Below are positions 35,612 to 60,659 of a stretch of DNA of 64,000 bases, one piece after another. Made by a program: the position numbers and the translations under genes. This DNA comes from Magallana gigas (Eukaryota). Position 1 is the stretch's first letter, and every line of letters starts with the position of its first letter. The stretch spans positions 21,390,001 through 21,454,000 of the forward strand of contig NC_088855.1 of assembly GCF_963853765.1 (NCBI RefSeq), in the 5' to 3' direction. The notes under the pieces were generated by a model. That model made no database searches, was not told where the DNA came from, and worked only from the letters and a program-made list of their open reading frames with translations.

Positions 35612-38543
35612 TACATGTACATAACACAACTCATCATACATGTATATATATACATCTGTGAATTCTAGGCAAAAGATTCCTGCAGTTGTTCCTCCTATGA
35701 TTTGATACGGAAAAATTCATAGATAACATGCAAATATGTGAATTGAATTTCATGTACAAATACAATGCATGTATTTTGAATTTATTATTGAAATAAAGCA
35801 AAACAATAGACTTTTAAAGTAATTTAAAAATAAAAGACTATAGTATTATTATAATTTTTACTCTAATAAAACATGCTTTTTTCACATGAAATCTACACAA
35901 GGCTTTGGTATATACGATGCATGTACACATACAAGTAGCTAAATGATAACTGAGTTATTGTTTGATTTAAAAGTTAATATTTTTAAACATTTCTATAGAA
36001 TTGAATATACAAATTTGGCAATAATGAAATATAGCCATTTGTTGAAAGACTGTGTTTTGGTACTTGTAATACATGACATTCATGTATCGCATACCGGTGC
36101 ATTATTAATTTATGTATTGATATGATGGATTCTTTCGTTATATGTAGTACACTTTACAATCAGAGATAATGACCTGATCATGTATGCCATTCCAAGCATA
36201 GCTGCTGACTTTTAATGTTTTTTTTATTTCATTAATTATTGTCTCTTAAAATGTGCAGATCTAGAAAGGGGCCACGGGTCTAAACACCTCCTGAAAAATT
36301 CAAGCTTTTTCAATTTATACATAGTAAAATTACGGTACCAAAAATAATACCTGAATTGGACCACCCAACCTTGTTAAAATTCTCTGGATCCGCTGATGCT
36401 TACCATGTGTTTTCTGAGATATAACAGTCATGCTTTTAATATGTTTCACTGTACATGTAACAGAGTTGTTTTACCTCTCATTCCACACAAAGGTTATTCC
36501 ATGCATTCATATGTACAAGTTTAGAAGACAGATTTTAACCAATTCTTAAGTACCTTGTACAATGAATATACAGTGTATCATTGTACTGGATAATGATTTT
36601 ATTCTTTTATGTCAATATGTTAGTTGTAAAATTATTTACAGATATTTGATATTATATGGTAGTACACCGAATGCAGGATAACATATATAAATGGACAATA
36701 TTTGCTGTCATATAAAAGTAAAATTATTGATCATGGGGAAAAGCTGATAGCAACTTTAGAAGCTATATGAAGCTTCCTCTATGATCTATGTACCGGTACC
36801 ATATCATAAACACATGTAAAATCCATTACATATGCATATTGCTTTTCAGATTTTGCTTCGCTATTGGAATCATTCATTTCTTATTTATATACATGTATAT
36901 ATATATATTTGTGAGATATCGATAGGAGATCTGGTTATCCATTGGTTATGTGTTAGCTAATATAGGTAATACATTTCATTCTAATTCTTGTATACACATA
37001 TGCTTGTACTTTACAATCATTGATCAGAGAGACTGTGCACGTAATTACTGCATATAAGCTTTGCTCATTCTATAATTTATTCTGGTTGTTTATAAGATTG
37101 AGTGAGTTGGTATAACCACAGTGGTGGGTTCATTTGTTTTTCTTGATGGTTTGAAAAACCAAGTCTCAATTTACACATGTACATTATATAACAAAATGAA
37201 ACAAAGGAAGAACCAAGACCCACCTCTGTAATGTACACTGCATTTATGAAAATTTCATGTTTTTTCTATCATCGAAAAATCATGTCATAAAAATTGGTTG
37301 AAACTGCTATTAGAATATTACATGCATTATGATTAAAATTATACTGTTATATTGTGTCATTATGTTTCCTAGAAAAAAAACACCTCTTTAATCTAGCACA
37401 TGATGTTGCTGGTAAAAGCAAATAAAGTTATCATGCAAAAATATTTTCTTATTTGTTATATGTTCCTACCAACTTTCAATCCTCAGCCCATAAAGAAGAT
37501 GGGGAGATAAGATATGCCCATTTGGATTAGTTGTAAAATATAATTTTAAAATTTTTGCAACTAAATCTACTTGATAATGAATGTTGTAATACAGGTTTGC
37601 AAACGTGCAATTTCTAACTAAATTCAGTTTTAGATATGCTTTAAGATTTGGTGGTATCTAACCCATGACTTAATAAGCTGGTTCTCTAATTTAGATATAC
37701 AATGTACTTGTATTTGAATTAAATTTAAATCAAAAGAATTTTATGTAGGTGTTTTACAAAGCTATATATCCTTTTTGTCAGAGTTCTTATGGAAAATACA
37801 ATAGATAAAATGAACAAAAATAATAAAAGGATTCATTATGTGTTTGATTTTGTGGAGAAATGGTATATGTCACAAACGCAGTGAATTAAAACCACCATGA
37901 TAAATTTCACATTCTACAATATATGAGGCCATAACATTAAAAAAATGAGGTCACTATGACCTAGCTGCTTTTGGGTGTAAAAAAACCTTTTCAAAAAAAT
38001 TCATCAGCTGACCATATATTAAGAATGGAGGTTCTAAGCCTCACATTGCTGTAGAAATGATCCAGACATGATTTTGAGCATGTGCAGGTAAAAGTGTAAC
38101 ATGTTTTGGGACACCCTGTACAATAAGATTCCACAATTAGGCCAACATGACCTAGCTTTTTTTCAATTGTGACACACCTCTCTAAAATATGCATCAGCTA
38201 ACCAGGTTCAATCATTCTAGGCACAGTACCAGTGTAAAAGATATGACTTGGGCACAAAAAAAAGCTAAAAGGATGCAGATGTCAAAAGACATGCTATAAA
38301 ATGCAACTTCATTAATTTCACTTTTATTATACGCAAAACATAGTACATGTACAATGTAATTACAAAATAATGTATCACAGATTCAATCACACCAATTACT
38401 TCTTTCACTAGGATTATTATTGGTGTGGTACCAGTATATATGCAGTTGGACACAACTCGTAATTCTTGCATTTATGATTTTGCTGCCACCACTTAGCTTC
38501 ATCATGACCTCAAAGAATTTTCCAAAGCATATGCCTTGCTTAT

Positions 38544-41500
38544 TTACAGCTTTGATAATTCCTTTAATGGGCCATGCCATTCTTCTTCTGAAAAATTAGA
38601 AGTTCAAAAATAAATTTCATCTTGGATGAGTACAAGACAATATGGACGTTACCTGATTAATTACAAACATTTGGATATCAACTACAGATTTTTCTTTAAC
38701 ATTCAGTTAAAGTTGCAATTATGTTTGAGTGCAAGTGTACTAAGTAAACTCTCCTGAAAGTTTTAAGGGATATTTGACTCCTTTTCAATTAAGCCATGTC
38801 CACATGTAGGAAAGTCACTGTAGTTGTATTGTTTACAAGATTTTGTATGATTGTGTATTTCGCTAAAGTTTAATTATTATCTAAAAACATTTAGAGTTAT
38901 CTTCCATTATCATATTGATATGTATTTTCTGCAGTTATCTTTCTTTTTTGAACCTAGAGTTATCCTTTCATTATATGATTTAGAGTTACTTTTCCTAATT
39001 GTTGACTTCCTGTTTGTTGTTTGTTATTCTCTTTTGAGAAGTGGACAGGCATAGCCTACATCCACTTCTCTTCGCAAGCTCTCATGTTTTGATTCTGGAA
39101 AACGTGTAAATGTCGGAACCAAAGACGGTTTACACTTCGAGCCATATTTCGACTCCAGTTTCACTGAATTTTCGTAACAGACCTATTATTTCTATATTTT
39201 AAACATAAATGCATCCATATAACACAAACAAATCACCACTAACCCGTTCTCAAATCATTTTCTCAACCTCAACATTCCGGGTTTAAATTATGAGATCACT
39301 CGCTATAGGTGGTTTAAAAAGTAGAAATTTTAGAGTCGGAAAAAACGGAAAATAGTGTTCCGATTGTAGACTTTAGATTAAAGGTATTTTTCTTAAAATT
39401 TACAGAGATATATAGAACGGTCTTACAATTTAAGACAAGTTAACAAAATGCATACGATAAAATAAGTAACTTTGTCACATAAAACAATGAAAACTCTTTA
39501 TTTTAATCTTTCTTGTATGCTATATTAATCAATGTTCGTTTTATTGTTTAAAATAGATGTAGAACAAAATTTGTCACCATAAAAGATGGTTAAAAAGGGA
39601 AGAAATACCACTTTGTAATTTATCGACTCAGTATTTGTTTGTATGTTGTAAGATTAAGTTGATTCAGTTACGTTTTCCACATTATTGTCGTAAATAGGTT
39701 TCCAATTTTATCCGAAACATAAACATTTAATCTGCGCTGACCTAGATAAACAGTGTGATACACAAAATTTAAACCCGGGATGTAGAAGTTGCGAAAATGA
39801 TTTGACAGCGGGTTAGTGTTGATTTTTTGTGATATATGGATGCATTTATGTTTAAAATATAGAAATAATAGGTCTGTTACGAAAATTCAGTGAAACTGGA
39901 GTCGAAACATGGCACGAAGTGTAAACCGTCTTTGGTTCCGACATTTACACGTTTTCCAGAATCAAAACATGAGGGCTTGCGAAGAGAAGTGGATGTAGGC
40001 TATGCCTGTCCACTTCTCAAAAGAGAATAGTTGTTTGTGTGACCCACACAAGGACACTTAGTTCACCCAACATGTTTTTCGTATTCCTATGCTGCCACAC
40101 ACTGTAAGTAGTTTTCTGTTGATTTATATTACATACGCGGCTATTCATTTATATGTTTACTGTTTCGTATTGTTATATAAATGCAGTTTATAAGTAAATT
40201 TCTCATTATCTCTAAAAAGTATGGAACGCCATAATTGTCATTGTCAATCTAAGTAAATAACGTACGTTTGTTACAATTTTCTATGGAAACCCATTTGTGT
40301 TAAAATTCATTGTTTTTTGGACCTTATCTTCAATACTGTTATTTTTTCATTTCTATTCTTTCATTACAATTATATTATATGCATTTTGTCTTTACATGTA
40401 CATTGTTTTTGAGAACGTATGAGTAATTCATACTTTGTTTTTGTTTCAGTTTTTTACCGCATACACAATAAATACGAAGCACTGGATTGTTGTGTTGGTT
40501 AACTATCTGTAGGCAAAGGCAGAATAGTAGTACATATGTAATATAAAATTACCACTCAAAGACTGTCATATTTTCATCGGGGATGCATTTTACAAAAGAA
40601 CTTCTGACAAAGTTGTAAATATTTTCAGTCTTGTGGAATGATTTTTGATGAACAAATTTTATAAAAACCATTAATTTACCCTTAATATTTTGATTTTAAT
40701 ACATGTAATTATATTTTACGGCCATTAAATTCAAAGATTCGTTAGTTTGTGATAATAAGCATTCATTAATTTGGTCATAAACTTCTGTAAAACGAAGCCA
40801 TAGTCTCTACCTGTACATAAAATCATAAGTCATACATTGTATGCTTGTACTTGCCTAATAACATTGCTAATATTGGAAATCTGTCTGATCCAAATATAGA
40901 TTCTTTCTTCCCATTTATGTGAGCCACAATCCATGGACTGCCAAAGGCCTGAAAAGATCAAGTTTTAAAGGTATTATTTTATTATTATTATATGTCTTAT
41001 TATTATATTGACATATAGAGCGCAAAATATACATAGTTTCTATGCGCTGCACAATGTACAATTTTGAGATCTCTCGCATATTATCAAGACTTACATTGTT
41101 TTTACATAGCTTCCTCCCAACTGTAAGCTCTTGACCTGCCCCTCAGGTATTTCACTCCCGACATTAGTTCAAATGTACTCACCCCTTCATCCAGGGCCTG
41201 TTTTGTGTACTGAGCAAGTCTGTCCTTCACATCTTGGTCCTTCATTCTTTTAAGTGCTGTTGCTATGGCATCATCACATAGTCCTGCTTTTTTTGCGGCC
41301 TTGAAAATATTGAATGAAATTGAGCAAATGAAAATCAAAGTATCATTGTTGAGAATATTAATGATTCCTTTTATTTTTACTTTTCTTGAAATTAACTTTC
41401 CAGTAATGTAAATTTCTTCTTGTTCAACATAAATTTATGTCTAAATTAAATTAATATCAGAAAAGTTTGCCATTAGTCTGAAGAGGGGTGATTCTTTTTC

Positions 41501-42557
41501 TTCTACACTTATTGAATAACTTACTAGAAAATGATTTCAAAATAATACTACATTAAAATGAATATTTCATTCATGAAGACACAGGCTTAATTTAAGTATA
41601 TACATGAACCAGTAATCAAATGATTTTGGAGTTGGTTGCATGTACTGGTAATTGCTTTTGTTCTTTTTTTCCTCAAATTAATTTAGAAGTAAACTATGCT
41701 TACACACATTAGTTTTTTCTCTTCTTCTAATATTAATTTGAGAAAAAAAAATCTTTTTCAATGTTTTTACCTCTGCATAATGCTGGGGGTCAGTGACTGG
41801 TTCATCCTGTAAAAGAAACAGATTCATGTTTGACATACTGTGATGTAGAACCATTTTAACAAGACCTTGGACTTTCAGTAGGACGTAGCTATCTAATTCT
41901 TGCATCAACGTGGTTTCAAGCGAAATTTGCACCGATTGCATAGTCGTAGCTCAAAAGCCAGACAAATCTTGTTGATTTCAGAGAGCCGTGGCTGACAATG
42001 AAATAGACAAGCCTACGTCACATTACTGTTTGACAAAACTACCCAAAGTCCAAGCTCTTGATAAAATTACCAGGGATTAGCTTATTTCCTTATTTCAGTA
42101 ATGTTATCATACATGTCTTGGGAGTCACCAAACATACTTAACCCTTGTGTAATTGACTAAAGTGATTTCTATTTGCAGATACCTTCCTCAACATATGCTT
42201 TATTATACATATATAGCTAGTTTTATTTTACAAGCATTTACTGGAAATGTTTTTGAGATATTATTAGTTGATGCATCTAGATGTTTTCATTTAATTTCTA
42301 CAAAAATAGACATTTTTTTTTTCAAAAAATTTACCAGTATATTTACATATAATAATTGATAGGCTATGAATATTTCCTATGAACCAAATCAAAAGAATGT
42401 ACAAGAAAAACCTTGTAAATCTAAATCAACATACATTTTTCCAAATTCGGAACCAGAATTGCCGAGAGAGTTCCTCTGTGTACTCAGGATGGGCGATGTC
42501 CACAGCTGTTAGTAACCTCTGGACGGGAAGAGTCCCAAACATCACGCTGCCAAAGTC
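38544..42557 (-). CDS. Tandem duplicate of GST kappa exons 4-8: 42557-42435, 41806-41771, 41299-41183, 40948-40855, 38587-38544. It has no exons 1-3 of its own.
   Basis: All five exons have the same lengths as in the full gene, open frames and intact splice sites. Two amino acid changes in exon 4 (F>L, M>I); the other differences checked are synonymous. Confidence 0.8.
39025..40029. mobile_element. MITE/foldback element of about 1 kb with TIRs of about 260 bp and a probable TA target duplication
   Basis: tattctcttttgagaagtggacaggcatagcctacatcc... is mirrored by ...ggatgtaggctatgcctgtccacttctcaaaagagaata. A fragment of the same end lies at 50902-50940. Confidence 0.9.
41845..42056 (-). repeat. 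Dispersed repeat, inverted copy of 11283-11512, inserted in intron 4 of the duplicated GSTK segment
   Basis: Absent from the equivalent intron of the full gene (empty site near 46225). Confidence 0.8.
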
Positions 42558-44313
42558 CTGACCCACAGGACAGAAAAGAATTAATTCAAATTTTTTTTTT
42601 TTTAGGGGGGGGGGGGAGATCAACTTTTTTAAATCTTACAGTTATTCATGAAAATAAATAATAAATTAAAGTCCCTTCAGTATTCAAACTCGGGACCTGC
42701 GAGTCGGTAGGTCTAGGCTACACCCATTGAGCCACAGACAGAGTTATTCAACTGGTTTGTATCCACACACCGTTGCAGTTATGATACCACATCTTTAAAA
42801 AAATTATGATTCAACACCTAAATAAAGTCAAATTAAGCGACAGCACACCGATCTAATGCAGACCCTATCTTAATGTATGGAACCTGTATAATAGGGCCCA
42901 CTCAGTGCCCTGGCGCCAAAAATAGGCACCTATATCGCCACTTTTGAGACCAGATTCCGTCAGGGGACACTTGTAACCTTGAGGACCGGGTCTCAGCTAA
43001 ATGGCATACCTCCTAGTTTGGGCGCTAGGCGCCCCGTTTAGAGACCCTATCTAAATTTACGGAACCTGTACGATACATGTAGGGTCAATTCGGTGCCCTG
43101 ACGCAAAAAATCGGTAATTATATCGCCACTTTTGAGACTGGATTTCGTGGTGTATGGAGACAAAATATATTTTCTCTTCAAACTTATAACATGTACATGT
43201 ACTTTCTATAGACAGCAAGTTAAACAAAGCATTACATATCCGGCATTTTTGCAATAATCTTCCTTTTTTAAATAAATTAATGAAACTGTTCATGACCAAA
43301 TTAATGTTTGAAATTAAATTAAAAAACATGCAGGTCAATTAATATGTAAATGTGCTTTTATGCAATTTATATTGTAACATTAAATAAAAGTAAATATCAA
43401 TTGGAAATAGATATGTTTTATTTATTTTATTGTCAATCTTCCCTCACAGGAACTGTGATATAGACTAAGTAAGTAGACCCTGACAACGTTTTCCAAATCC
43501 TTTGAATTCCATGTTGACTGGTCCTCTGTCTAGTATATATCGCGCATATCAGACAGACATTGCCAGTCTAAATTCCATGATGATGCTAAGTGGAAGGGGT
43601 CGGTCCTGTCCCAAGCACCTGTGTTCACGATTTGTATCATTTTGTGGAGAAAAACTATGTCACAAACACAGTGAATGTAATAGACCATCATAGAAAAATT
43701 TCCAAAATACAATTACATGTGTATAACTTTATACTGGTACATGTACATGGAACCATTAGATTACAAAACAAGGTCAGAGTGACCTGCTTCTAAAAGTACC
43801 AAACCTTTTCTTTGAGATTCGTAGAGATTCTAAGACTCGCATTGCCCAAGAAATGATCCAGACATGATTTGAGTATGTACAGTAAGATTCCACTACAAGG
43901 CCAACATGACCTACTTTTGGGTTGTGACACGGCCTCCCTAAAAACATGCATCAGCTAACCAGGTTTCAACCATTCTAGACCCACAGTGTAAAAGATATGA
44001 CTTGGACACAAAAAACAAAAAATAAAAAGGACAATGTCAAAAGACATGCATTTAATAATAAAATGCAACTGCATCAATTTCATTTTTATTATCGGCAAAA
44101 CATAGTACATGTACAAAGTAATTACAAAATAATGTATCACAGATTCAATCACACCAATTACTTCTTTCACTAGGATTATTATTGGTTTATGGTACATTGT
44201 ACCAGCATACATGTATGTAGTTACACACAACTCATAATTCCTGCCGTTTATGACTTTGCTGCCACCGCTTAGTTTGACCTCAAAGAATTTTCCAAAGCAC
44301 ATGCCTTGCTTAT

Positions 44314-51206
<6,893 letters not shown>

Positions 51207-52506
51207 CTTTGTTTTTATGAACAACTGTTACCTCAAATGTTTCGTGTATAACATTTGAAAAAAATATTTTCGATACATTTATTCACGTTAATTAAAAAAA
51301 TGTATCTCTCATCTTTGATTTAAAGTAAATTTATCTATAGAAAGATATGATTATGCACTCAATTTATTCATTTTTATTTTTTCAAAGTTTTTCTGATGTA
51401 ATTTACTATTACATGTACTTTGAATTTTGATACATATTGAAATAGTTTTTTTGTCAATTTATATGTAAAATCTGGCATTTCAAACACAACATCAATATTA
51501 ATTATGATTATATATTTTTTTTTAGAACATTACTTCATATGACTCATATTTTTTATTTCTCTTATGCAATCAAGCCGGAAAACTTACTTTGGTCATAAAA
51601 TCTTCGAAACAGAAGGTTTTAAAAATATGTTTATGGTACATGTATGCCAAAAAAGCATAACAACTTCTGAATCTTTTTAAAACCGACAAGGAGTTTTTTT
51701 TAATTGTTTTACGCGAGGTCGTAATTTTTTTTTACTCAAAAGAATAAACAAGATACACATGTATAGATCTATCCTTTTTCTAAGAGATATATCTTACAAA
51801 CTTTGAGAAATATCTTTTCTGAAATAGATTTTGGGCCACGTTTGGTGAAGAAAATAGTAATACAGAAGAAGAAACGTCGAATTTACATTTTTTTATCTAT
51901 TCATGCAATTTGTAAATTGCGATAATTAAACAATGAATTAGCACTTTCAAACATATTGGTCCACACTACTTTACGAAATAAACATCTTTTAAAAAAGAAG
52001 TACATGTACTAGTCCACATAAATGAATATTTAATGAATTCATAACTTTTAATTTTCTTATGACGGTCTTTTTTTCTGAAGGGGGGGGGGGTTGGTTGGTA
52101 GTGAGGATGCCGTATTTTTTTCCATATTAACAATAAAAGGATCGAATGTGGTCCTATCTGGACCCTCCAATTTTAACGTAATTTCTACCGACATCTAACT
52201 ATGCATGTCGCAACCAGCCCTTGTACATGTGAACAAAGTTTTAATGCAAATATGTACTGTTTGAAAAAGGGAAAATCTAGAAAGCTAAGGGAAGTACATT
52301 GTACCTAGATATGAATCAATATCATACGAATTACAGCAAACATATAACACAGTTTCGTTAAATTAAATTGAAAAGCAAAAAATGCCACTCCTAAAAAGTC
52401 TAAAGAGCTTGTTATTTTTTTAAACGAACTCGTTGAAATAAAGATATAGATAAGACACATAGAATTTGGTTTATCCTGTTTATTTAGATAGCACCAACAA
52501 TCTCAT

Positions 52507-53327
52507 CTAGTAGTAGCCTCCCTTTTTACCTCCTCCTCCTCCTCCCCATCTGCAAATCAAAAACAAAAANNNNNNNNNNNNNNNNNNNNNNNNNNNNNNN
52601 NNNNNNNNNNNNNNNNNNNNNNNNNNNNNNNNNNNNNNNNNNNNNNNNNNNNNNNNNNNNNNNNNNNNNNNNNNNNNNNNNNNNNNNNNNNNNNNNNNNN
52701 NNNNNNNNTGTTGCAACAAACTATATCCACAGTAGCCCTGGCTGTATTCCCCACGGAAACAGTACTGTCTGCACTGACAGTTTCTGCCAATTCCACCGCT
52801 TCCACCTCCAGGGTACCAGTTTCCACCGCCAGGGTACCAGTTTCCTCCGCCGGGGTACCAGTCATCGTTACCTGGGTACCACCCGCCTCCACCTCCGGGA
52901 TATCCACCACCAGGATAGTTGAAGGCAGAAACTGAGAAAAAGGAAATACAGATATTTAAAAGTAGTCATTGTATTTTCCATTTGCAAGTATTTTGATTAT
53001 GCTTTGTTTTGAAATAAACAGTTTTTTAAATTTTGCACGAAAGACATCTTGAAACAGAAAAACATAATATGTTGAGTGTCACTGGCTGTTCAAAGAGTTC
53101 AATCTTACAAAAAGTGCAGTAAACTAGATTGTGCAAGAAAAGGTAGGCCACACTAAAAGAATTAAAGATACTCCCCCCCCCCCAAAAAAAAAAAAAAAAA
53201 AAAAATTTAAAAAAATTTAAAATAAAAATATGAAAACAATTTGAACTCGTAAAAGACTAAACATTTTCTTACCGGAGACTACAGCAATGCAGAGTACTGC
53301 TAGGGAAACAAAGTGAGAGATGGCCAT
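52507..53327 (-). CDS. Small secreted Gly/Trp/Tyr/Pro-rich peptide with a Cys motif. Exons 53327-53273, 52931-(gap at 52708), 52549-52507.
   Basis: Signal-peptide-like MAISHFVSLAVLCIAVVS|VSA, then FNYPGGGYPGGGGGWYPGNDDWYPGGGNWYPGGGNWYPGGGSGGIGRNCQCRQYCFRGEYSQGYCGYSLLQ [gap] WGGGGGGKKGGYY*. Clean splice sites and an upstream TATA box. Confidence 0.82.
52570..52708. other. Assembly gap (N run) hiding the end of exon 2 of the Gly-rich peptide
   Basis: Run of N. Confidence 1.
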
Positions 53328-53384
53328 TGTTGTTACGTCGTGCTTCCAGACAATTCGAATATAGGGAGGGAGTGCCAGGGGTCC

Positions 53385-53393
53385 TTATATATA
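53385..53393 (-). promoter_or_regulatory. TATA box of the Gly-rich peptide gene
   Basis: TATATATAA on the minus strand, about 60 bp upstream of the ATG. Confidence 0.65.
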
Positions 53394-55047
53394 CACAGAT
53401 CTACCTAGCGTGACCCCGGGGTCACTGGAATTGACCGCTAGTTTCCTCTTTCCATCACAAAGAGTAATGATGAAATATTACTGTTGTATAAAGGCTTAAT
53501 TATTATTATCATAAAACTTATGAATTCCCATTACTAGTAATTGTGGCCATGTTTGGGGGTATGATGAATGTTCTGATACGTGTAAACACGTTGTTTTCAC
53601 GCAAAAATGTTTATGTAGAACTCTAGATATATATATTATTCTTCTCTATATCAGAATTATTGAAATTGATAGCACTCACTCTTCCTATGTGAGTAACGCA
53701 CTATCAACGCACGGTCATTGTATTTTTGATATGAATGTAAAGCTAGAGATTTTAGTTTATATTTTTGTTGTTGTTTTCATTAACATTATTGATTAATTAT
53801 CATCATTATCATTAATAAAAAAATGCTGTAAAAAAAGTAAGAATAAAAACGTTTATCGTAAACGTCATATTTGAACACACTTTTCATATTTATCTTTGCA
53901 AATTTATTAATTATACTAAATTTACTAACTCTCTAGTCATGAAAAAAAATAAATCCAATAATTATATTTTAGATATTAAATGCATGATTACTAGCTTCCT
54001 TGTCTTTTTTTCTGATCGCGTGCGATTGTACTGGAACTATAAAAATGTCGGAAACAACTATTTCATTACATATCTTAAGTATGAATGATTCATGATGACG
54101 TTTCTACATATGTATCTATCTTATATTCATTAAGCAGTCAATCTTTACTGAAGTGACCGGGGAGTCGTTAACTCAGACATTATATTGGCATTAACACTTA
54201 TGTAGACCTATATGGCTATTTTTCACGATGAACTATCATGAGTAATTGCACTTACGATCCCCACAAACAAAGAAAATACTAGGTGTACACAATACGATCA
54301 TCCGTGTTCGCTAGATTTATCATCTTTGACATAGAAGGGGATTCACCACACGTTTATTTACCCCCCCCCCCCCAGTGACCCCACCCCCTTTATAAACTCC
54401 TTCCCAAAGTTATTCACACCTTATATATACACTGTATATTACATGTATATGGACAAATATTATGTTTCTTTCATGTATGTGCGTAATCCCTCCACCCCAT
54501 TGTAGATTTTTTTTCTTTTTCGTTGGACAACTACATGTGCAGCTGTATATTAAATGAAGTATGCTTTAACCCCCACTCTACCCCAATCCCCTCTCCCTTC
54601 CCCTGTAGAAAATAGGCTAGTCGTTTCTTCATATAGGAATAGTTTTTATGAAACTATTATTTAAAAACCTTTTTAACAACAATTTCTCTTTTAAGTTAAT
54701 AAAAAATCGGGTGTAAACATATTACATTGAATTCTTCCTCAAGGATCTCCGCATTTTATACATAATACATGCGTTCATGTCTGTTAATAAAATATGTGTA
54801 CTGTCATGAACAAAATAATAAATTACACATATCCATACAAGTGTTATGGAAATTCAGCCCCCCCCCCCAAAAAAAAAAATAAATAAATAAAAATCTCAAT
54901 TAGCTTGATATACAAGTTTTAGAAGAAATATCATTGAATAGGATAGGATAGGATAGGAAATACTACTCAAAACTTTAAGAAAAATTTAGCCATACTAATC
55001 TTGCTATAATTTCCAAAATCCTTATACAATTAAGTTACAACTAGCAT

Positions 55048-59937: not shown

Positions 59938-60591
59938 CTATTTCAAAGATATTCTCTCATGTTCAAACAACGTGATTTTCCTCGCATTTTTTAAGCAGTC
60001 CGCTTCAACAAATTTTTGTTTGCAAGCTGTGAATGCATCTCTGGCCTTCACAGGTTCACCTTTTCTCCTGTATAACTCAACTAGAAATTGATAGACCTGT
60101 AAATCCGAATTAATTTCAGCTGATTTAATGAATTTATTTTCAGCGAGATTGTAACTTCCATATGACATTAACCACTGTCCTTCATATTTCAATATTGTTG
60201 TATTTTTATTGTCCGTTATGCTCTTCTCTACCATTTCCAAATAGCTCTCTTCTTGGGAATCAAACGAACGCTTTAACACGTGCATGGTACCATACCTGAA
60301 AACCTCTACATAACCTCGAGTAATAAACTGACGTGTTATTTTCATCACAAGATAATTGTATTCTTTTTGCCTAATCAAACATTTGAGTAAAAACGGAGTG
60401 TTTTGAATATGGACGTAATTCGATATTTGTGACGTAATTGATATTTCTCTGTTGCCATAGAAGGACCACACAGCCAGTCGACTTTCTTTCGAGAACTCCC
60501 TAAACTCTGTATTAATCAAGGAAAACCACGGAACATTTTGCCTCAAAACCGTATATCCTCCAGTCATGTGAATATCCCTGTCCATGAACAC
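59938..60591 (-). CDS. Intronless hypothetical protein (ORF3; 215 aa from the ATG at 60585), directly downstream of the hammerhead
   Basis: Open frame of 217 codons in AT-rich DNA, co-directional with the RT. No recognisable domain. Confidence 0.55.
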   Translation of the reverse strand: MFMDRDIHMTGGYTVLRQNVPWFSLINTEFREFSKESRLAVWSFYGNREISITSQISNYVHIQNTPFLLKCLIRQKEYNYLVMKITRQFITRGYVEVFRYGTMHVLKRSFDSQEESYLEMVEKSITDNKNTTILKYEGQWLMSYGSYNLAENKFIKSAEINSDLQVYQFLVELYRRKGEPVKARDAFTACKQKFVEADCLKNARKITLFEHERISLK

Positions 60592-60659
60592 ACCCGTGAC
60601 GTCACTTTGTTTTGAAAAAAGACGACATCAATCAACCAAACTTGTTGTAAATTTATTAA

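What the first reader, a model, noticed from the sequence alone, without database searches (positions are those of the whole stretch)
52507..53327. Secreted Gly-rich peptide with an alpha-defensin-like cysteine signature
Seen: signal peptide, four WYPG(GG) repeats, then C-Q-C-R-Q-Y-C-F-R-G-E-Y-S-Q-G-Y-C, cut off by an N gap, then a WGGGGGGKKGGYY tail. Known: mammalian alpha-defensins follow C-x-C-x3/4-C-x9-C-x6/10-CC with a conserved Arg after C2, a Glu four residues after C3 and a Gly two before C4 (HNP-1: CYCRIPACIAGERRYGTC). All three are in register here. CRxxCFRxEY also echoes the beta-defensin-like domain of oyster big defensin. Inference: a hybrid Gly-rich/defensin-fold peptide, either a new host-defence family or a shell/periostracum matrix protein (shematrin-like Gly/Tyr content). 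Prediction: the gap hides a CC pair shortly after YSLLQ.
Basis: partly seen in the sequence, partly recalled or inferred. Interest (0 to 1): 0.75.

Follow-up and report, generated by a model that had tools for sequence, protein, structure and literature searches.

The report
Oyster glycine-rich peptide with defensin-like knot
A small, expressed oyster gene, known otherwise only from the eastern oyster, encodes a secreted peptide that joins a glycine/tryptophan/tyrosine repeat arm to a six-cysteine module spaced like a mammalian alpha-defensin; it is probably a look-alike, not a relative, and its function (defence or shell/periostracum matrix) is untested.

Summary
A three-exon gene on the minus strand (53327 to 52507) has a TATA box and an AATAAA signal. 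It encodes a 110-codon precursor: signal peptide, six YPG repeats (four of them WYPG), a Cys module and a Gly/Tyr tail.

The N stretch covers the last 11-12 bases of exon 2 and most of intron 2. Spliced RNA contigs from three studies bridge it, and the frame is kept.

The only relative found among billions of proteins is Crassostrea virginica LOC111136664. It lies in conserved synteny and has the same exon structure. It reads C-x-C-x3-C-x9-C-x7-CC, so the predicted CC pair is present there. In the Cys module, silent sites are saturated but only 13% of replacement sites differ.

Domain-only AlphaFold and the ESM Atlas model both give a three-stranded sheet. Its structural neighbours are almost only alpha-, beta- and big defensins. 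However, the scores are weak, a full-length model failed, and sequence matches to defensin families are at noise level (13.6-16.2 bits against cut-offs of 22-23).

It is therefore not a member of the alpha-defensin family. It is more likely a convergent or very remote trans-defensin-like peptide. Host defence and a KRMP/shematrin-like matrix role remain open. No paper describes it.

The parts
53385..53393 (-). TATA box (TATATATAA), inside a 15-base block GTATATATAAGGACC that is identical in the C. virginica orthologue
   Evidence: read directly from the sequence
53273..53327 (-). Exon 1 coding part: MAISHFVSLAVLCIAVVS plus 1 base, with donor G|GTAAGA (phase 1). It carries most of the signal peptide. 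Cleavage is expected after VSA (residue 21) by the -3,-1 rule
   Evidence: splice junction seen in RNA contigs of X1, X5 and X8
52932..53272 (-). Intron 1 (341 nt, GT..AG), containing a poly(T)/poly(G) run
   Evidence: joint 52931|53273, ends CT..AC on the + strand
52780..52923 (-). Gly/Trp/Tyr/Pro repeat arm (FNYPGGGYPGGGGG, WYPGNDD, three times WYPGGGx, SGGIGRN). Includes a 21-nt tandem repeat at 52800-52862
52709..52779 (-). Visible part of the Cys module: CQCRQYCFRGEYSQGYCGYSLLQ plus 2 bases. This gives four Cys with spacing C-x-C-x3-C-x9-C
   Evidence: 22 of 28 residues identical to C. virginica
52570..52708 (-). N stretch. It hides the last 11-12 bases of exon 2 and most of intron 2 (phase 2). 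Not read or filled here
   Evidence: RNA contigs bridge with 11 letters between; the orthologue's intron 2 lies at the same codon and starts with a (CT)n run
52550..52569 (-). Visible 3' end of intron 2: tttttgtttttgatttgcag (polypyrimidine tract plus AG)
   Evidence: joint (the joint may lie one base further, since base 52550 fits both sides)
52507..52549 (-). Exon 3 coding part: the last base of a split codon, then WGGGGGGKKGGYY and the TAG stop
   Evidence: orthologue tail is WGGGNKGGYY
52479..52484 (-). AATAAA polyadenylation signal, 23 nt after the stop codon
   Evidence: RNA contigs end at 52484 and 52492

Best explanation
This is a real, expressed, lineage-restricted oyster gene for a secreted peptide of about 89 residues (about 110 with the signal peptide). 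The peptide has two modules.

Module 1 is a flexible arm of (W/Y)YPGGG(N) repeats. It is 32-38% Gly and 23% aromatic, and is predicted to be disordered.

Module 2 is a compact, weakly basic module of about 30 residues. In the orthologue it carries six Cys spaced C-x-C-x3-C-x9-C-x7-CC. It is followed by a short Gly/Tyr tail.

I infer that the Cys module folds as a three-stranded, three-disulfide sheet of the trans-defensin type (the alpha/beta-defensin-like fold). I infer that it reached the alpha-defensin spacing, with Arg after C2, Glu after C3 and Gly-x-C4, by convergence or from a very remote oyster defensin-like ancestor. It is not a member of the mammalian alpha-defensin family.

The mechanism I think most likely is an extracellular host-defence effector. 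The knot would carry the activity. The Gly/aromatic arm would bind or anchor the peptide to surfaces such as chitin, mucus, periostracal matrix or microbial walls. Known crustacean chimeras (hyastatin, penaeidins, type II crustins) are built on the same logic.

Shown: gene model, splicing, expression, orthology, selective constraint, and the Cys framework in the orthologue.

Inferred: signal-peptide cleavage, fold, disulfide pairing, and any antimicrobial or anchoring function.
For: - Gene model and transcripts.
- Only relative: C. virginica XP_022343165.1 / XP_022343385 (LOC111136664), found among 5.8 billion proteins by word-indexed search and the only true relative among 1.84 billion cluster representatives read by phmmer (the one other hit was spurious).
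- Orthology: conserved synteny (GT22 gene, peptide gene, DSBA/GST-kappa gene) and identical intron positions and phases.
- Six-Cys framework with terminal CC in the orthologue.
- Purifying selection on the Cys module: pN 0.126, pS 0.95.
- AlphaFold2 of the module alone: pLDDT 70, strands at residues 8-10, 17-22 and 30-34.
- Foldseek against PDB: 41 of 44 rows are alpha-, beta- or big defensins; RK-1 gives TM 0.57/0.69 and rmsd 1.5 over 28 residues.
- VIA-align against 48,161 chains: all 23 chains with Z of 2 or more have a defensin-type fold; best are hBD-2 at Z 4.0 and RK-1 at Z 3.7, rmsd 1.9 over 32 residues.
- AlphaFold DB clusters: mostly beta-defensins among the named rows.
- The ESM Atlas's own model of the orthologue also neighbours beta-defensin clusters, TM 0.53-0.60.
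- Best PDB sequence hit is the alpha-defensin RK-1, E 0.057, with C-x-C-[RK]-x-Y-C-x-P-x-E-x3-G-x-C-G shared.
- An adjacent CC at the last strand does not fit the C-x-C of the cysteine-stabilised alpha/beta (cis-defensin) motif. Definitions are in PMC7203481.
- Architectural precedent, a Gly- or Pro-rich arm plus a 6-Cys module with chitin binding: PMC2866484.
Against: - The fold evidence is weak. All Foldseek E-values exceed 0.3 and the best Z is 4.0.
- The five AlphaFold models ranged from pLDDT 43 to 70.
- The full mature peptide with a 3-row alignment gave pLDDT 42 and helices.
- A single-sequence prediction may simply echo the Cys pattern of defensins in the training set, so it is not independent of the sequence pattern.
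- No significant sequence similarity to any defensin family. Genome-wide noise reaches higher scores.
- Net charge is only about +2 (pI 8.3-8.4), which is low for an antimicrobial peptide.
- The gene is single-copy and conservative, whereas oyster antimicrobial peptides are usually multi-copy and fast-evolving.
- Gly/Tyr-rich secreted proteins of bivalves are mostly shell, periostracum or adhesive proteins. Pearl-oyster KRMPs also combine a basic 6-Cys region with a Gly/Tyr region (PMC3191542).
- The tissue and inducibility of expression are unknown. The runs are coded and unlabelled.
Confidence: 0.4

Rival explanations
1. Structural matrix protein. The peptide would be secreted by the mantle into the periostracum, shell framework, ligament or larval cement. 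The Gly/Tyr/Trp repeats would be cross-linked by tyrosinase (quinone tanning). The Cys module would be only a small basic binding or cross-linking knot, as in pearl-oyster KRMPs and shematrins. It would have no antimicrobial role.
For: - Composition: 32-38% Gly, 23% aromatic, GGYY C-terminus.
- KRMPs consist of a signal peptide, a basic region with six conserved Cys and a Gly/Tyr region, are expressed at the mantle edge, and are proposed to be quinone-tanned (PMC3191542).
[quoted passage not shown] Genes with that name are treated as biomineralisation genes in C. virginica studies, though none of those listed is this gene (PMC12040131).
- Low net charge.
Against: - No sequence similarity to KRMP, shematrin or any other annotated protein.
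- The module order is reversed and the peptide is not Lys-rich.
- It is single-copy with a strongly conserved Cys module, whereas shell matrix families are multi-copy and fast-evolving.
- The Arg/Glu/Gly triad in defensin register is conserved in both species.
Confidence: 0.3
2. Chance resemblance. The Cys module would fold differently (another small disulfide knot), and the alpha-defensin register would be a coincidence picked out of a very large scan. The function would be something else, for example a signalling peptide, enzyme inhibitor or toxin-like peptide.
For: - All sequence statistics are insignificant.
- The profile search mixes plant cis-defensins, alpha-defensins and unrelated kinases.
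- The full-length AlphaFold model is unstructured or helical.
- The scan covers about 250,000 windows, so E near 0.02 is expected somewhere.
- The two possible paralogues keep only the Cys framework, an Arg two residues after C3 and G-Y-C; they lack the Arg after C2 and the Glu.
Against: - The CC pair was predicted from four Cys alone and is present in the orthologue at a defensin-compatible distance.
- Two different predictors give the same three-stranded sheet for the module.
- 23 of 23 structural neighbours are of defensin type.
Confidence: 0.2
3. True but very diverged descendant of the invertebrate big-defensin/beta-defensin lineage. The hydrophobic N-terminal domain would have been replaced by Gly-rich repeats and the first Cys would have moved next to the second.
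For: - Big defensins are oyster genes with the same fold class, and bivalves have non-canonical forms that lost the N-terminal domain (PMC7203481).
- The gene has a phase-1 intron upstream of the exon that holds the Cys module.
- Cg-BigDef1, Cg-BigDef5 and Tachypleus big defensin appear among the structural neighbours.
Against: - No hit to Pfam Defensin_big from the peptide.
- The spacing differs in three of four loops from my recollection of big defensins (C-x6-C-x3-C-x13/14-C-x4-CC); that pattern was not taken from a tool here.
- The phase-1 intron sits after the signal peptide, about 50 codons before the Cys module, not directly at its 5' end. Phase-1 introns after signal peptides are common.
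- There is an extra phase-2 intron after the CC.
Confidence: 0.1

Closest known systems
Mammalian alpha-defensins, nearest the rabbit kidney defensin RK-1 (PDB 1EWS, Pfam PF17860)
   Same: - Six Cys as C-x-C-x3-C-x9-C-x7-CC in the orthologue; RK-1 has x8 in the last loop.
- Arg/Lys after C2, Glu four after C3, Gly-x-C4.
- RK-1 also shares Y before C3, P after C3 (C. virginica) and G after C4.
- RK-1 is among the best structural neighbours of the module's model.
   Different: - Oyster, not mammal.
- No anionic propiece, and no hit to Defensin_1 or Defensin_propep.
- RK-1 model score is 13.6-16.2 bits against a cut-off of 23.4.
- A Gly/aromatic repeat arm and a Gly/Tyr tail are attached.
- The Cys module is followed by a phase-2 intron.
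- Disulfide pairing is unknown.
[quoted passage not shown]
   Same: - Predicted three-stranded sheet.
- Terminal CC.
- Present in oysters.
- Two-module build (for big defensins).
- Beta-defensins dominate the structural neighbours.
   Different: - C1-C2 spacing is 1 instead of 4-8.
- No hydrophobic N-terminal domain.
- No HMM hit above noise.
- No intron directly before the Cys module.
Hyastatin, type II crustins and penaeidins (crustacean chimeric antimicrobial peptides; PMC2866484)
   Same: - Signal peptide, then a Gly-rich (or Pro-rich) unstructured arm, then a C-terminal Cys module (six Cys in hyastatin and penaeidins; Cys-rich plus WAP in type II crustins).
- In hyastatin the arm binds chitin and the Cys module is needed for full antibacterial activity.
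   Different: - No sequence similarity.
- Different Cys arrays (penaeidin type, WAP).
- Crustacean, from haemocytes.
- The repeat unit here is WYPGGG(N), not LGGG/IGGG.
KRMP and shematrin shell-matrix proteins of pearl oysters (PMC3191542)
   Same: - Small secreted bivalve proteins.
- KRMPs combine a basic region holding six conserved Cys with a Gly/Tyr-rich region; shematrins are Gly-rich.
- Gly/Tyr repeats suited to quinone tanning.
   Different: - Module order is reversed.
- Not Lys-rich.
- No detectable sequence similarity.
- Single copy.
- Tissue of expression unknown.

Membership tests
Alpha-defensin (Pfam PF00323/PF00879, RK-1-like PF17860) | Six Cys spaced C-x-C-x3/4-C-x9-C-x6-10-CC | tested here: met
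   Four Cys in register in the window. The full pattern, with x7 in the last loop, is in the C. virginica orthologue. The strict PROSITE form as I recall it has x9 in the last loop and would not match.
Alpha-defensin (Pfam PF00323/PF00879, RK-1-like PF17860) | Conserved Arg after C2 and Glu after C3 (salt bridge) and Gly two before C4 | tested here: met
   R, E and G are in register in both species. Whether they form a salt bridge or a bulge is not testable here.
Alpha-defensin (Pfam PF00323/PF00879, RK-1-like PF17860) | Profile score above the curated cut-off | tested here: not met
   PF17860 scores 13.6-16.2 bits against a cut-off of 23.4. PF00323 and PF00879 give no hit. Unrelated genomic ORFs reach 20.4 bits.
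Alpha-defensin (Pfam PF00323/PF00879, RK-1-like PF17860) | Precursor made of signal peptide, anionic propiece and C-terminal mature peptide; found only in some mammals | tested here: not met
   The precursor has a Gly/aromatic repeat arm instead of a propiece and a further Gly/Tyr tail. The host is an oyster, shown by synteny with C. virginica.
Alpha-defensin (Pfam PF00323/PF00879, RK-1-like PF17860) | Disulfide pairing C1-C6, C2-C4, C3-C5 | not testable with these tools
This needs mass-spectrometric mapping or NMR.
Big defensin (Pfam PF14862) | Hydrophobic globular N-terminal domain joined to a beta-defensin-like C-terminal domain | tested here: not met
   The N-terminal part consists of Gly/Trp/Tyr/Pro repeats. 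PF14862 gives no hit from the peptide. Definition from PMC7203481.
Big defensin / beta-defensin | Phase-1 intron directly at the 5' end of the Cys-rich region | tested here: not met
   The phase-1 intron follows the signal peptide, about 50 codons upstream. The repeat arm and the Cys module share one exon in both species.
Beta-defensin (PF00711, PF13841) | C-x4-8-C-x3-5-C-x9-13-C-x4-7-CC and a profile score above the cut-off | tested here: not met
   C1-C2 spacing is 1. PF13841 scores 12.1-15.4 bits against a cut-off of 22.2, and PF00711 gives no hit.
Trans-defensin fold (structural superfamily) | Three antiparallel strands with three disulfides, two of them leaving the last strand (CC) in opposite directions | tested here: inconclusive
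   The domain-only AlphaFold2 model (pLDDT 70) and the ESM Atlas model give three strands with defensin neighbours. Scores are weak and the full-length model failed.
KRMP / shematrin shell-matrix proteins | Sequence similarity to family members, mantle-edge expression, and presence in the shell matrix | tested here: inconclusive
   No family member was found in any protein search. Tissue of expression and shell proteomes could not be tested.

The most novel reading that the evidence does not exclude
An alpha-defensin-type framework (C-x-C start, terminal CC, Arg/Glu pair, Gly bulge) exists outside mammals. It would have been invented independently in oysters, or kept from an old invertebrate trans-defensin stock, and is fused to a WYPGGG repeat arm. 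It would be the founding member of an undescribed oyster host-defence peptide family. Two unannotated 8-Cys genes 15.8 Mb away on the same chromosome may be distant members.
Probability: 0.3. Interest if true: 0.8.

Novelty: new variant of a known kind. Interest (0 to 1): 0.55.

Why it matters
Alpha-defensins are held to be confined to a few mammals (PMC7203481). The known oyster antimicrobial peptides are cysteine-stabilised alpha/beta defensins, big defensins, a proline-rich peptide and BPI.

A conserved oyster peptide with the alpha-type Cys spacing and the same three non-Cys landmark residues would be one of two things. It could be a clear case of convergent evolution of a disulfide scaffold. 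Or it could be a new branch of trans-defensins in invertebrates.

Either way it offers a small module of about 30 residues that can be synthesised and tested. The species is farmed and suffers bacterial and viral mass mortalities.

If it instead proves to be a matrix protein, it would show a defensin-like knot used as a building block of periostracum or shell. That would link defence and biomineralisation secretomes.

The gene is absent from the protein database for the window's species and carries only an automatic or 'uncharacterized' name in C. virginica.

Tried and rejected
- Wrong frame. Searches used window:52711-52931:-, which is off by two bases. Their results are void and were redone.
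- Paralogues by protein search. Only Gly-rich noise was found, E above 0.1.
- Defensin HMMs on the whole genome. Defensin_big gave nothing. Defensin_RK-1 and Defensin_beta_2 gave only noise hits of 17-22 bits, some with stop codons, and none at this locus.
- DNA pattern for the six-Cys framework. There were 224 matches against 227 for the reversed control, nearly all TGY low-complexity, so it is useless as a chance estimate.
- Two non-repetitive hits led to the 8-Cys genes at C3:37.24 Mb. Their link to this gene is unproven. One of them as a single-sequence query gave E 0.48 and made this locus the third-best hit in the genome. hhalign gave probability 59%. Their joint profile does not list this locus. 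They have no database homologues.
- Full-length AlphaFold with a 3-row alignment gave pLDDT 42 and is unusable.
- ESM Atlas search by features gave no usable hit.
- The raw-read RNA run X23 gave 0 reads from about 1% of the run, which is no test.
- Literature searches by accession, gene number and peptide words found 0 papers. [quoted passage not shown]
- A dibasic KK cleavage/amidation site in the tail and an Arg cleavage site before the Cys module were considered and rejected, because neither is conserved in C. virginica.

Full report
**1. What is in the sequence**

On the minus strand there is a compact gene.
- A TATA box (TATATATAA) lies at 53385-53393.
- The ATG is at 53327.
- Exon 1 runs to 53273. 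It encodes MAISHFVSLAVLCIAVVS plus one base, with donor G|GTAAGA.
- Intron 1 is 341 nt and ends in ttctcag.
- Exon 2 starts at 52931. In the frame that begins at 52929 it reads SAFNYPGGGYPGGGGGWYPGNDDWYPGGGNWYPGGGNWYPGGGSGGIGRNCQCRQYCFRGEYSQGYCGYSLLQ, plus two bases, and then meets the N stretch (52570-52708).
- After the N stretch come 20 bases of a typical intron end (tttttgtttttgatttgcag).
- A last exon follows (52549-52507) that reads WGGGGGGKKGGYY and stop.
- An AATAAA signal lies at 52484-52479.

The three WYPGGGx units are a 21-nt tandem repeat. What it lacked is the exon structure. The tail is a separate exon, and the N stretch covers an exon end plus an intron.

**2. Continuity across the N stretch**

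This was tested first, as the scan's program asked.
- The listed 'RNA?' runs hold 95% of the words of exon 2, and the larger, unclassified (probably DNA) runs hold 100%. My query included four intron bases, so this fits spliced RNA.
- I laid four runs on 52440-53400.
- Contigs of X1, X5 and X8 (three studies, two organism labels) lack intron 1 exactly (52931|53273, GT..AG).
- Contigs of X1 and X5 also join 52709 to 52550 with 11 letters in between. X8 has a loose end consistent with the same joint.
- The count 2 visible bases + 11 + 2 gives 15 bases, which is 5 codons between ...LLQ and W. The frame is kept, and the precursor has 18+1+73+5+13 = 110 codons.
- Base 52550 fits both the acceptor AG and the transcript, so exon 2 most likely contributes 12 hidden bases and exon 3 starts at 52549. 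That makes a phase-2 intron, as in the orthologue.
- I used only the number of the bridging letters.

Two tool outputs showed some of these letters unasked.
- Table 5c printed the bridging letters.
-, a pattern search meant for paralogues, listed the window's own locus as a match to the six-Cys pattern.
- That match means the tools' copy of the genome holds letters there. It implies that the pattern is completed in this species too.
- I do not rest the verdict on this result.

**3. Relatives**

*Protein searches.*
- A word-indexed search of 5.8 billion proteins found one protein, C. virginica P0001. [quoted passage not shown]
- phmmer of P0001 against 1.84 billion cluster representatives found only itself and one spurious Gly-rich protein.

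*The C. virginica locus (L003).*
- It has the same order of neighbours: a GT22 glycosyltransferase gene, the peptide gene, and a DSBA/GST-kappa gene.
- It has the same TATA block, the same phase-1 intron after the signal peptide, and a phase-2 intron after ...CCS+AG.
- Its intron 2 begins with a (CT)n microsatellite.

*The orthologue's product.*
- It reads ...GIGGNCQCRQYCYPGEYTRGYCGYSLLRQCCSRWGGGNKGGYY, which is C-x-C-x3-C-x9-C-x7-CC.

*Within the window's genome.*
- A six-frame search found no paralogue with the Cys module.

**4. Constraint**

Over the 28 alignable codons of the Cys module, 15.5 of 16.3 silent sites differ between the two species, but only 8.5 of 67.7 replacement sites differ. 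The peptide sequence has therefore been held by selection. The repeat arm varies in the number of units.

**5. Is it a defensin?**

*Sequence.* The statistics are at noise level.
- Pfam gives only RK-1-like defensin (13.6-16.2 bits, cut-off 23.4) and Defensin_beta_2 (12-15 bits, cut-off 22.2). Defensin_1, Defensin_propep and Defensin_big give nothing.
- The best PDB sequence hit is RK-1 at E 0.057.
- A two-row profile gives E 0.2-1 for a mix of plant defensins, RK-1, cryptdin-4, HD6 and unrelated proteins.
- The same Pfam models score 17-22 bits at unrelated places in this genome.

*Pattern.* All six Cys, the Arg after C2, the Glu four after C3 and the Gly two before C4 are in alpha-defensin register in both species. 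The adjacent CC does not fit the C-x-C of cis-defensins (definitions in PMC7203481).

*Fold.*
- AlphaFold2 of residues 50-90 of the orthologue, with no alignment and no templates, gave pLDDT 70 and three strands.
- Its neighbours are 41 of 44 defensins in Foldseek/PDB, all with E above 1.
- All 23 chains with Z of 2 or more among 48,161 chains have a defensin-type fold. The best are hBD-2 at Z 4.0 and RK-1 at Z 3.7.
- The named rows in AlphaFold DB clusters are mostly beta-defensins.
- The ESM Atlas's own model of the orthologue also sits next to beta-defensin clusters.

*Against the fold.*
- The scores are weak.
- The five AlphaFold models differ (pLDDT 43-70).
- The full mature peptide failed (pLDDT 42).
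- Single-sequence predictors may simply recall defensins from the Cys pattern.

*Odds.* I put the defensin-type fold at roughly 55%. I put membership of the mammalian alpha-defensin family near zero, because the profile, the precursor build, the taxon and the gene structure all fail.

**6. Function**

The mature peptide is about 89 residues (71 in C. virginica). It is 32-38% Gly and 23% aromatic, with pI about 8.3-8.4 and net charge about +2. Two readings fit.

*(a) A chimeric host-defence peptide.* It would have an unstructured binding arm and a disulfide knot, as in hyastatin, penaeidins and type II crustins. In hyastatin the Gly-rich part binds chitin and the Cys part is needed for full antibacterial activity (PMC2866484).

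*(b) A matrix protein.* It would be built like pearl-oyster KRMPs, which have a signal peptide, a basic region with six conserved Cys and a Gly/Tyr region thought to be quinone-tanned, and are expressed at the mantle edge (PMC3191542).

I favour (a), possibly as a matrix-anchored form, at 0.4 against 0.3 for (b). The reasons are that the landmark residues of the knot are conserved while the arm varies, and that no similarity to matrix families was found. The low charge, the single-copy state and the composition argue the other way. Tissue data would decide, and the runs available here are unlabelled.

**7. Possible distant paralogues (side result)**

- The framework pattern hit two non-repetitive places 15.8 Mb away on the same chromosome.
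- Both look like two-exon genes: a signal-peptide exon, a phase-1 GT donor, and an exon with eight Cys. The core is C-P-C-x3-C-x-R-x5-G-Y-C-x7-CC.
- They are 48% identical to each other and have no database homologues.
- The link to the window's gene is suggestive only. One of them used as a single query gives E 0.48 and makes this locus the third-best hit in the genome. hhalign gives probability 59% and P 9e-5. Their joint profile does not list this locus.

**8. Novelty**

No paper in the searchable library mentions the gene, its accessions or its peptide words. It is a lineage-restricted gene. As far as I can find, it combines a repeat arm with an alpha-type defensin-like framework in a way not described before. 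I class it as a new variant of a known kind, with function untested.

Noticed in passing
G000:C3:37239705-37239872 (-) and G000:C3:37248334-37248507 (+); loci L039:7706-7933 and L040:6218-6508: Two divergently oriented, apparently unannotated two-exon genes. Each has a signal-peptide exon with a phase-1 GT donor (MKLHIVFCLYALLMLSG... and MARVVLYFSILCIFG...) and an 8-Cys exon with the same core, C-x-C-x3-C-x9-C-x7-CC, and G-Y-C. They are 48% identical to each other and have no homologue in the protein database. They may be distant paralogues of the window's gene.
   Followed up: partly
window 52570-52708 (and G000:C3:21442687-21442708): the genome search returned matches whose coordinates run into the N stretch. 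The tools' copy of the genome therefore holds letters where the window shows N, so this N run behaves as a mask rather than an unread gap. I did not fetch or read it.
   Followed up: no
window 59938-60612 (-): This stretch is 76% identical over 225 codons to the last coding exon of the C. virginica neighbour gene (768-aa product with Glyco_transf_22), in conserved synteny. It has no Pfam family of its own. It overlaps the stretch another first-stage note calls a Penelope-like retroelement, so at least this part may be a conserved host exon, or both gene models may include the element.
   Followed up: partly
window 38500-51300 (-): The exons of the DSBA/GST-kappa-like neighbour gene match the C. 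virginica gene twice (for example 46794-46651 and 42567-42427; 45671-45549 and 41299-41177). This indicates a tandem duplication of that gene in the window's species.
   Followed up: no
window 53583-53615 and about 53455-53475 (-), upstream of the gene: Two short non-coding blocks are conserved with C. virginica: TTTTTGCrTGAAAACAwCGTGTTTA about 270 bp upstream of the ATG, and GTAATmTTTCATCATTA about 140 bp upstream. They are candidate regulatory elements. No NF-kB-like site was noticed by eye; no motif scan was run.
   Followed up: no
window 53400 and upstream (-): One spliced RNA contig of run X1 extends at least 77 nt upstream of 53400, beyond the TATA box at 53385-53393. This suggests an additional upstream start or read-through transcription.
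   Followed up: no
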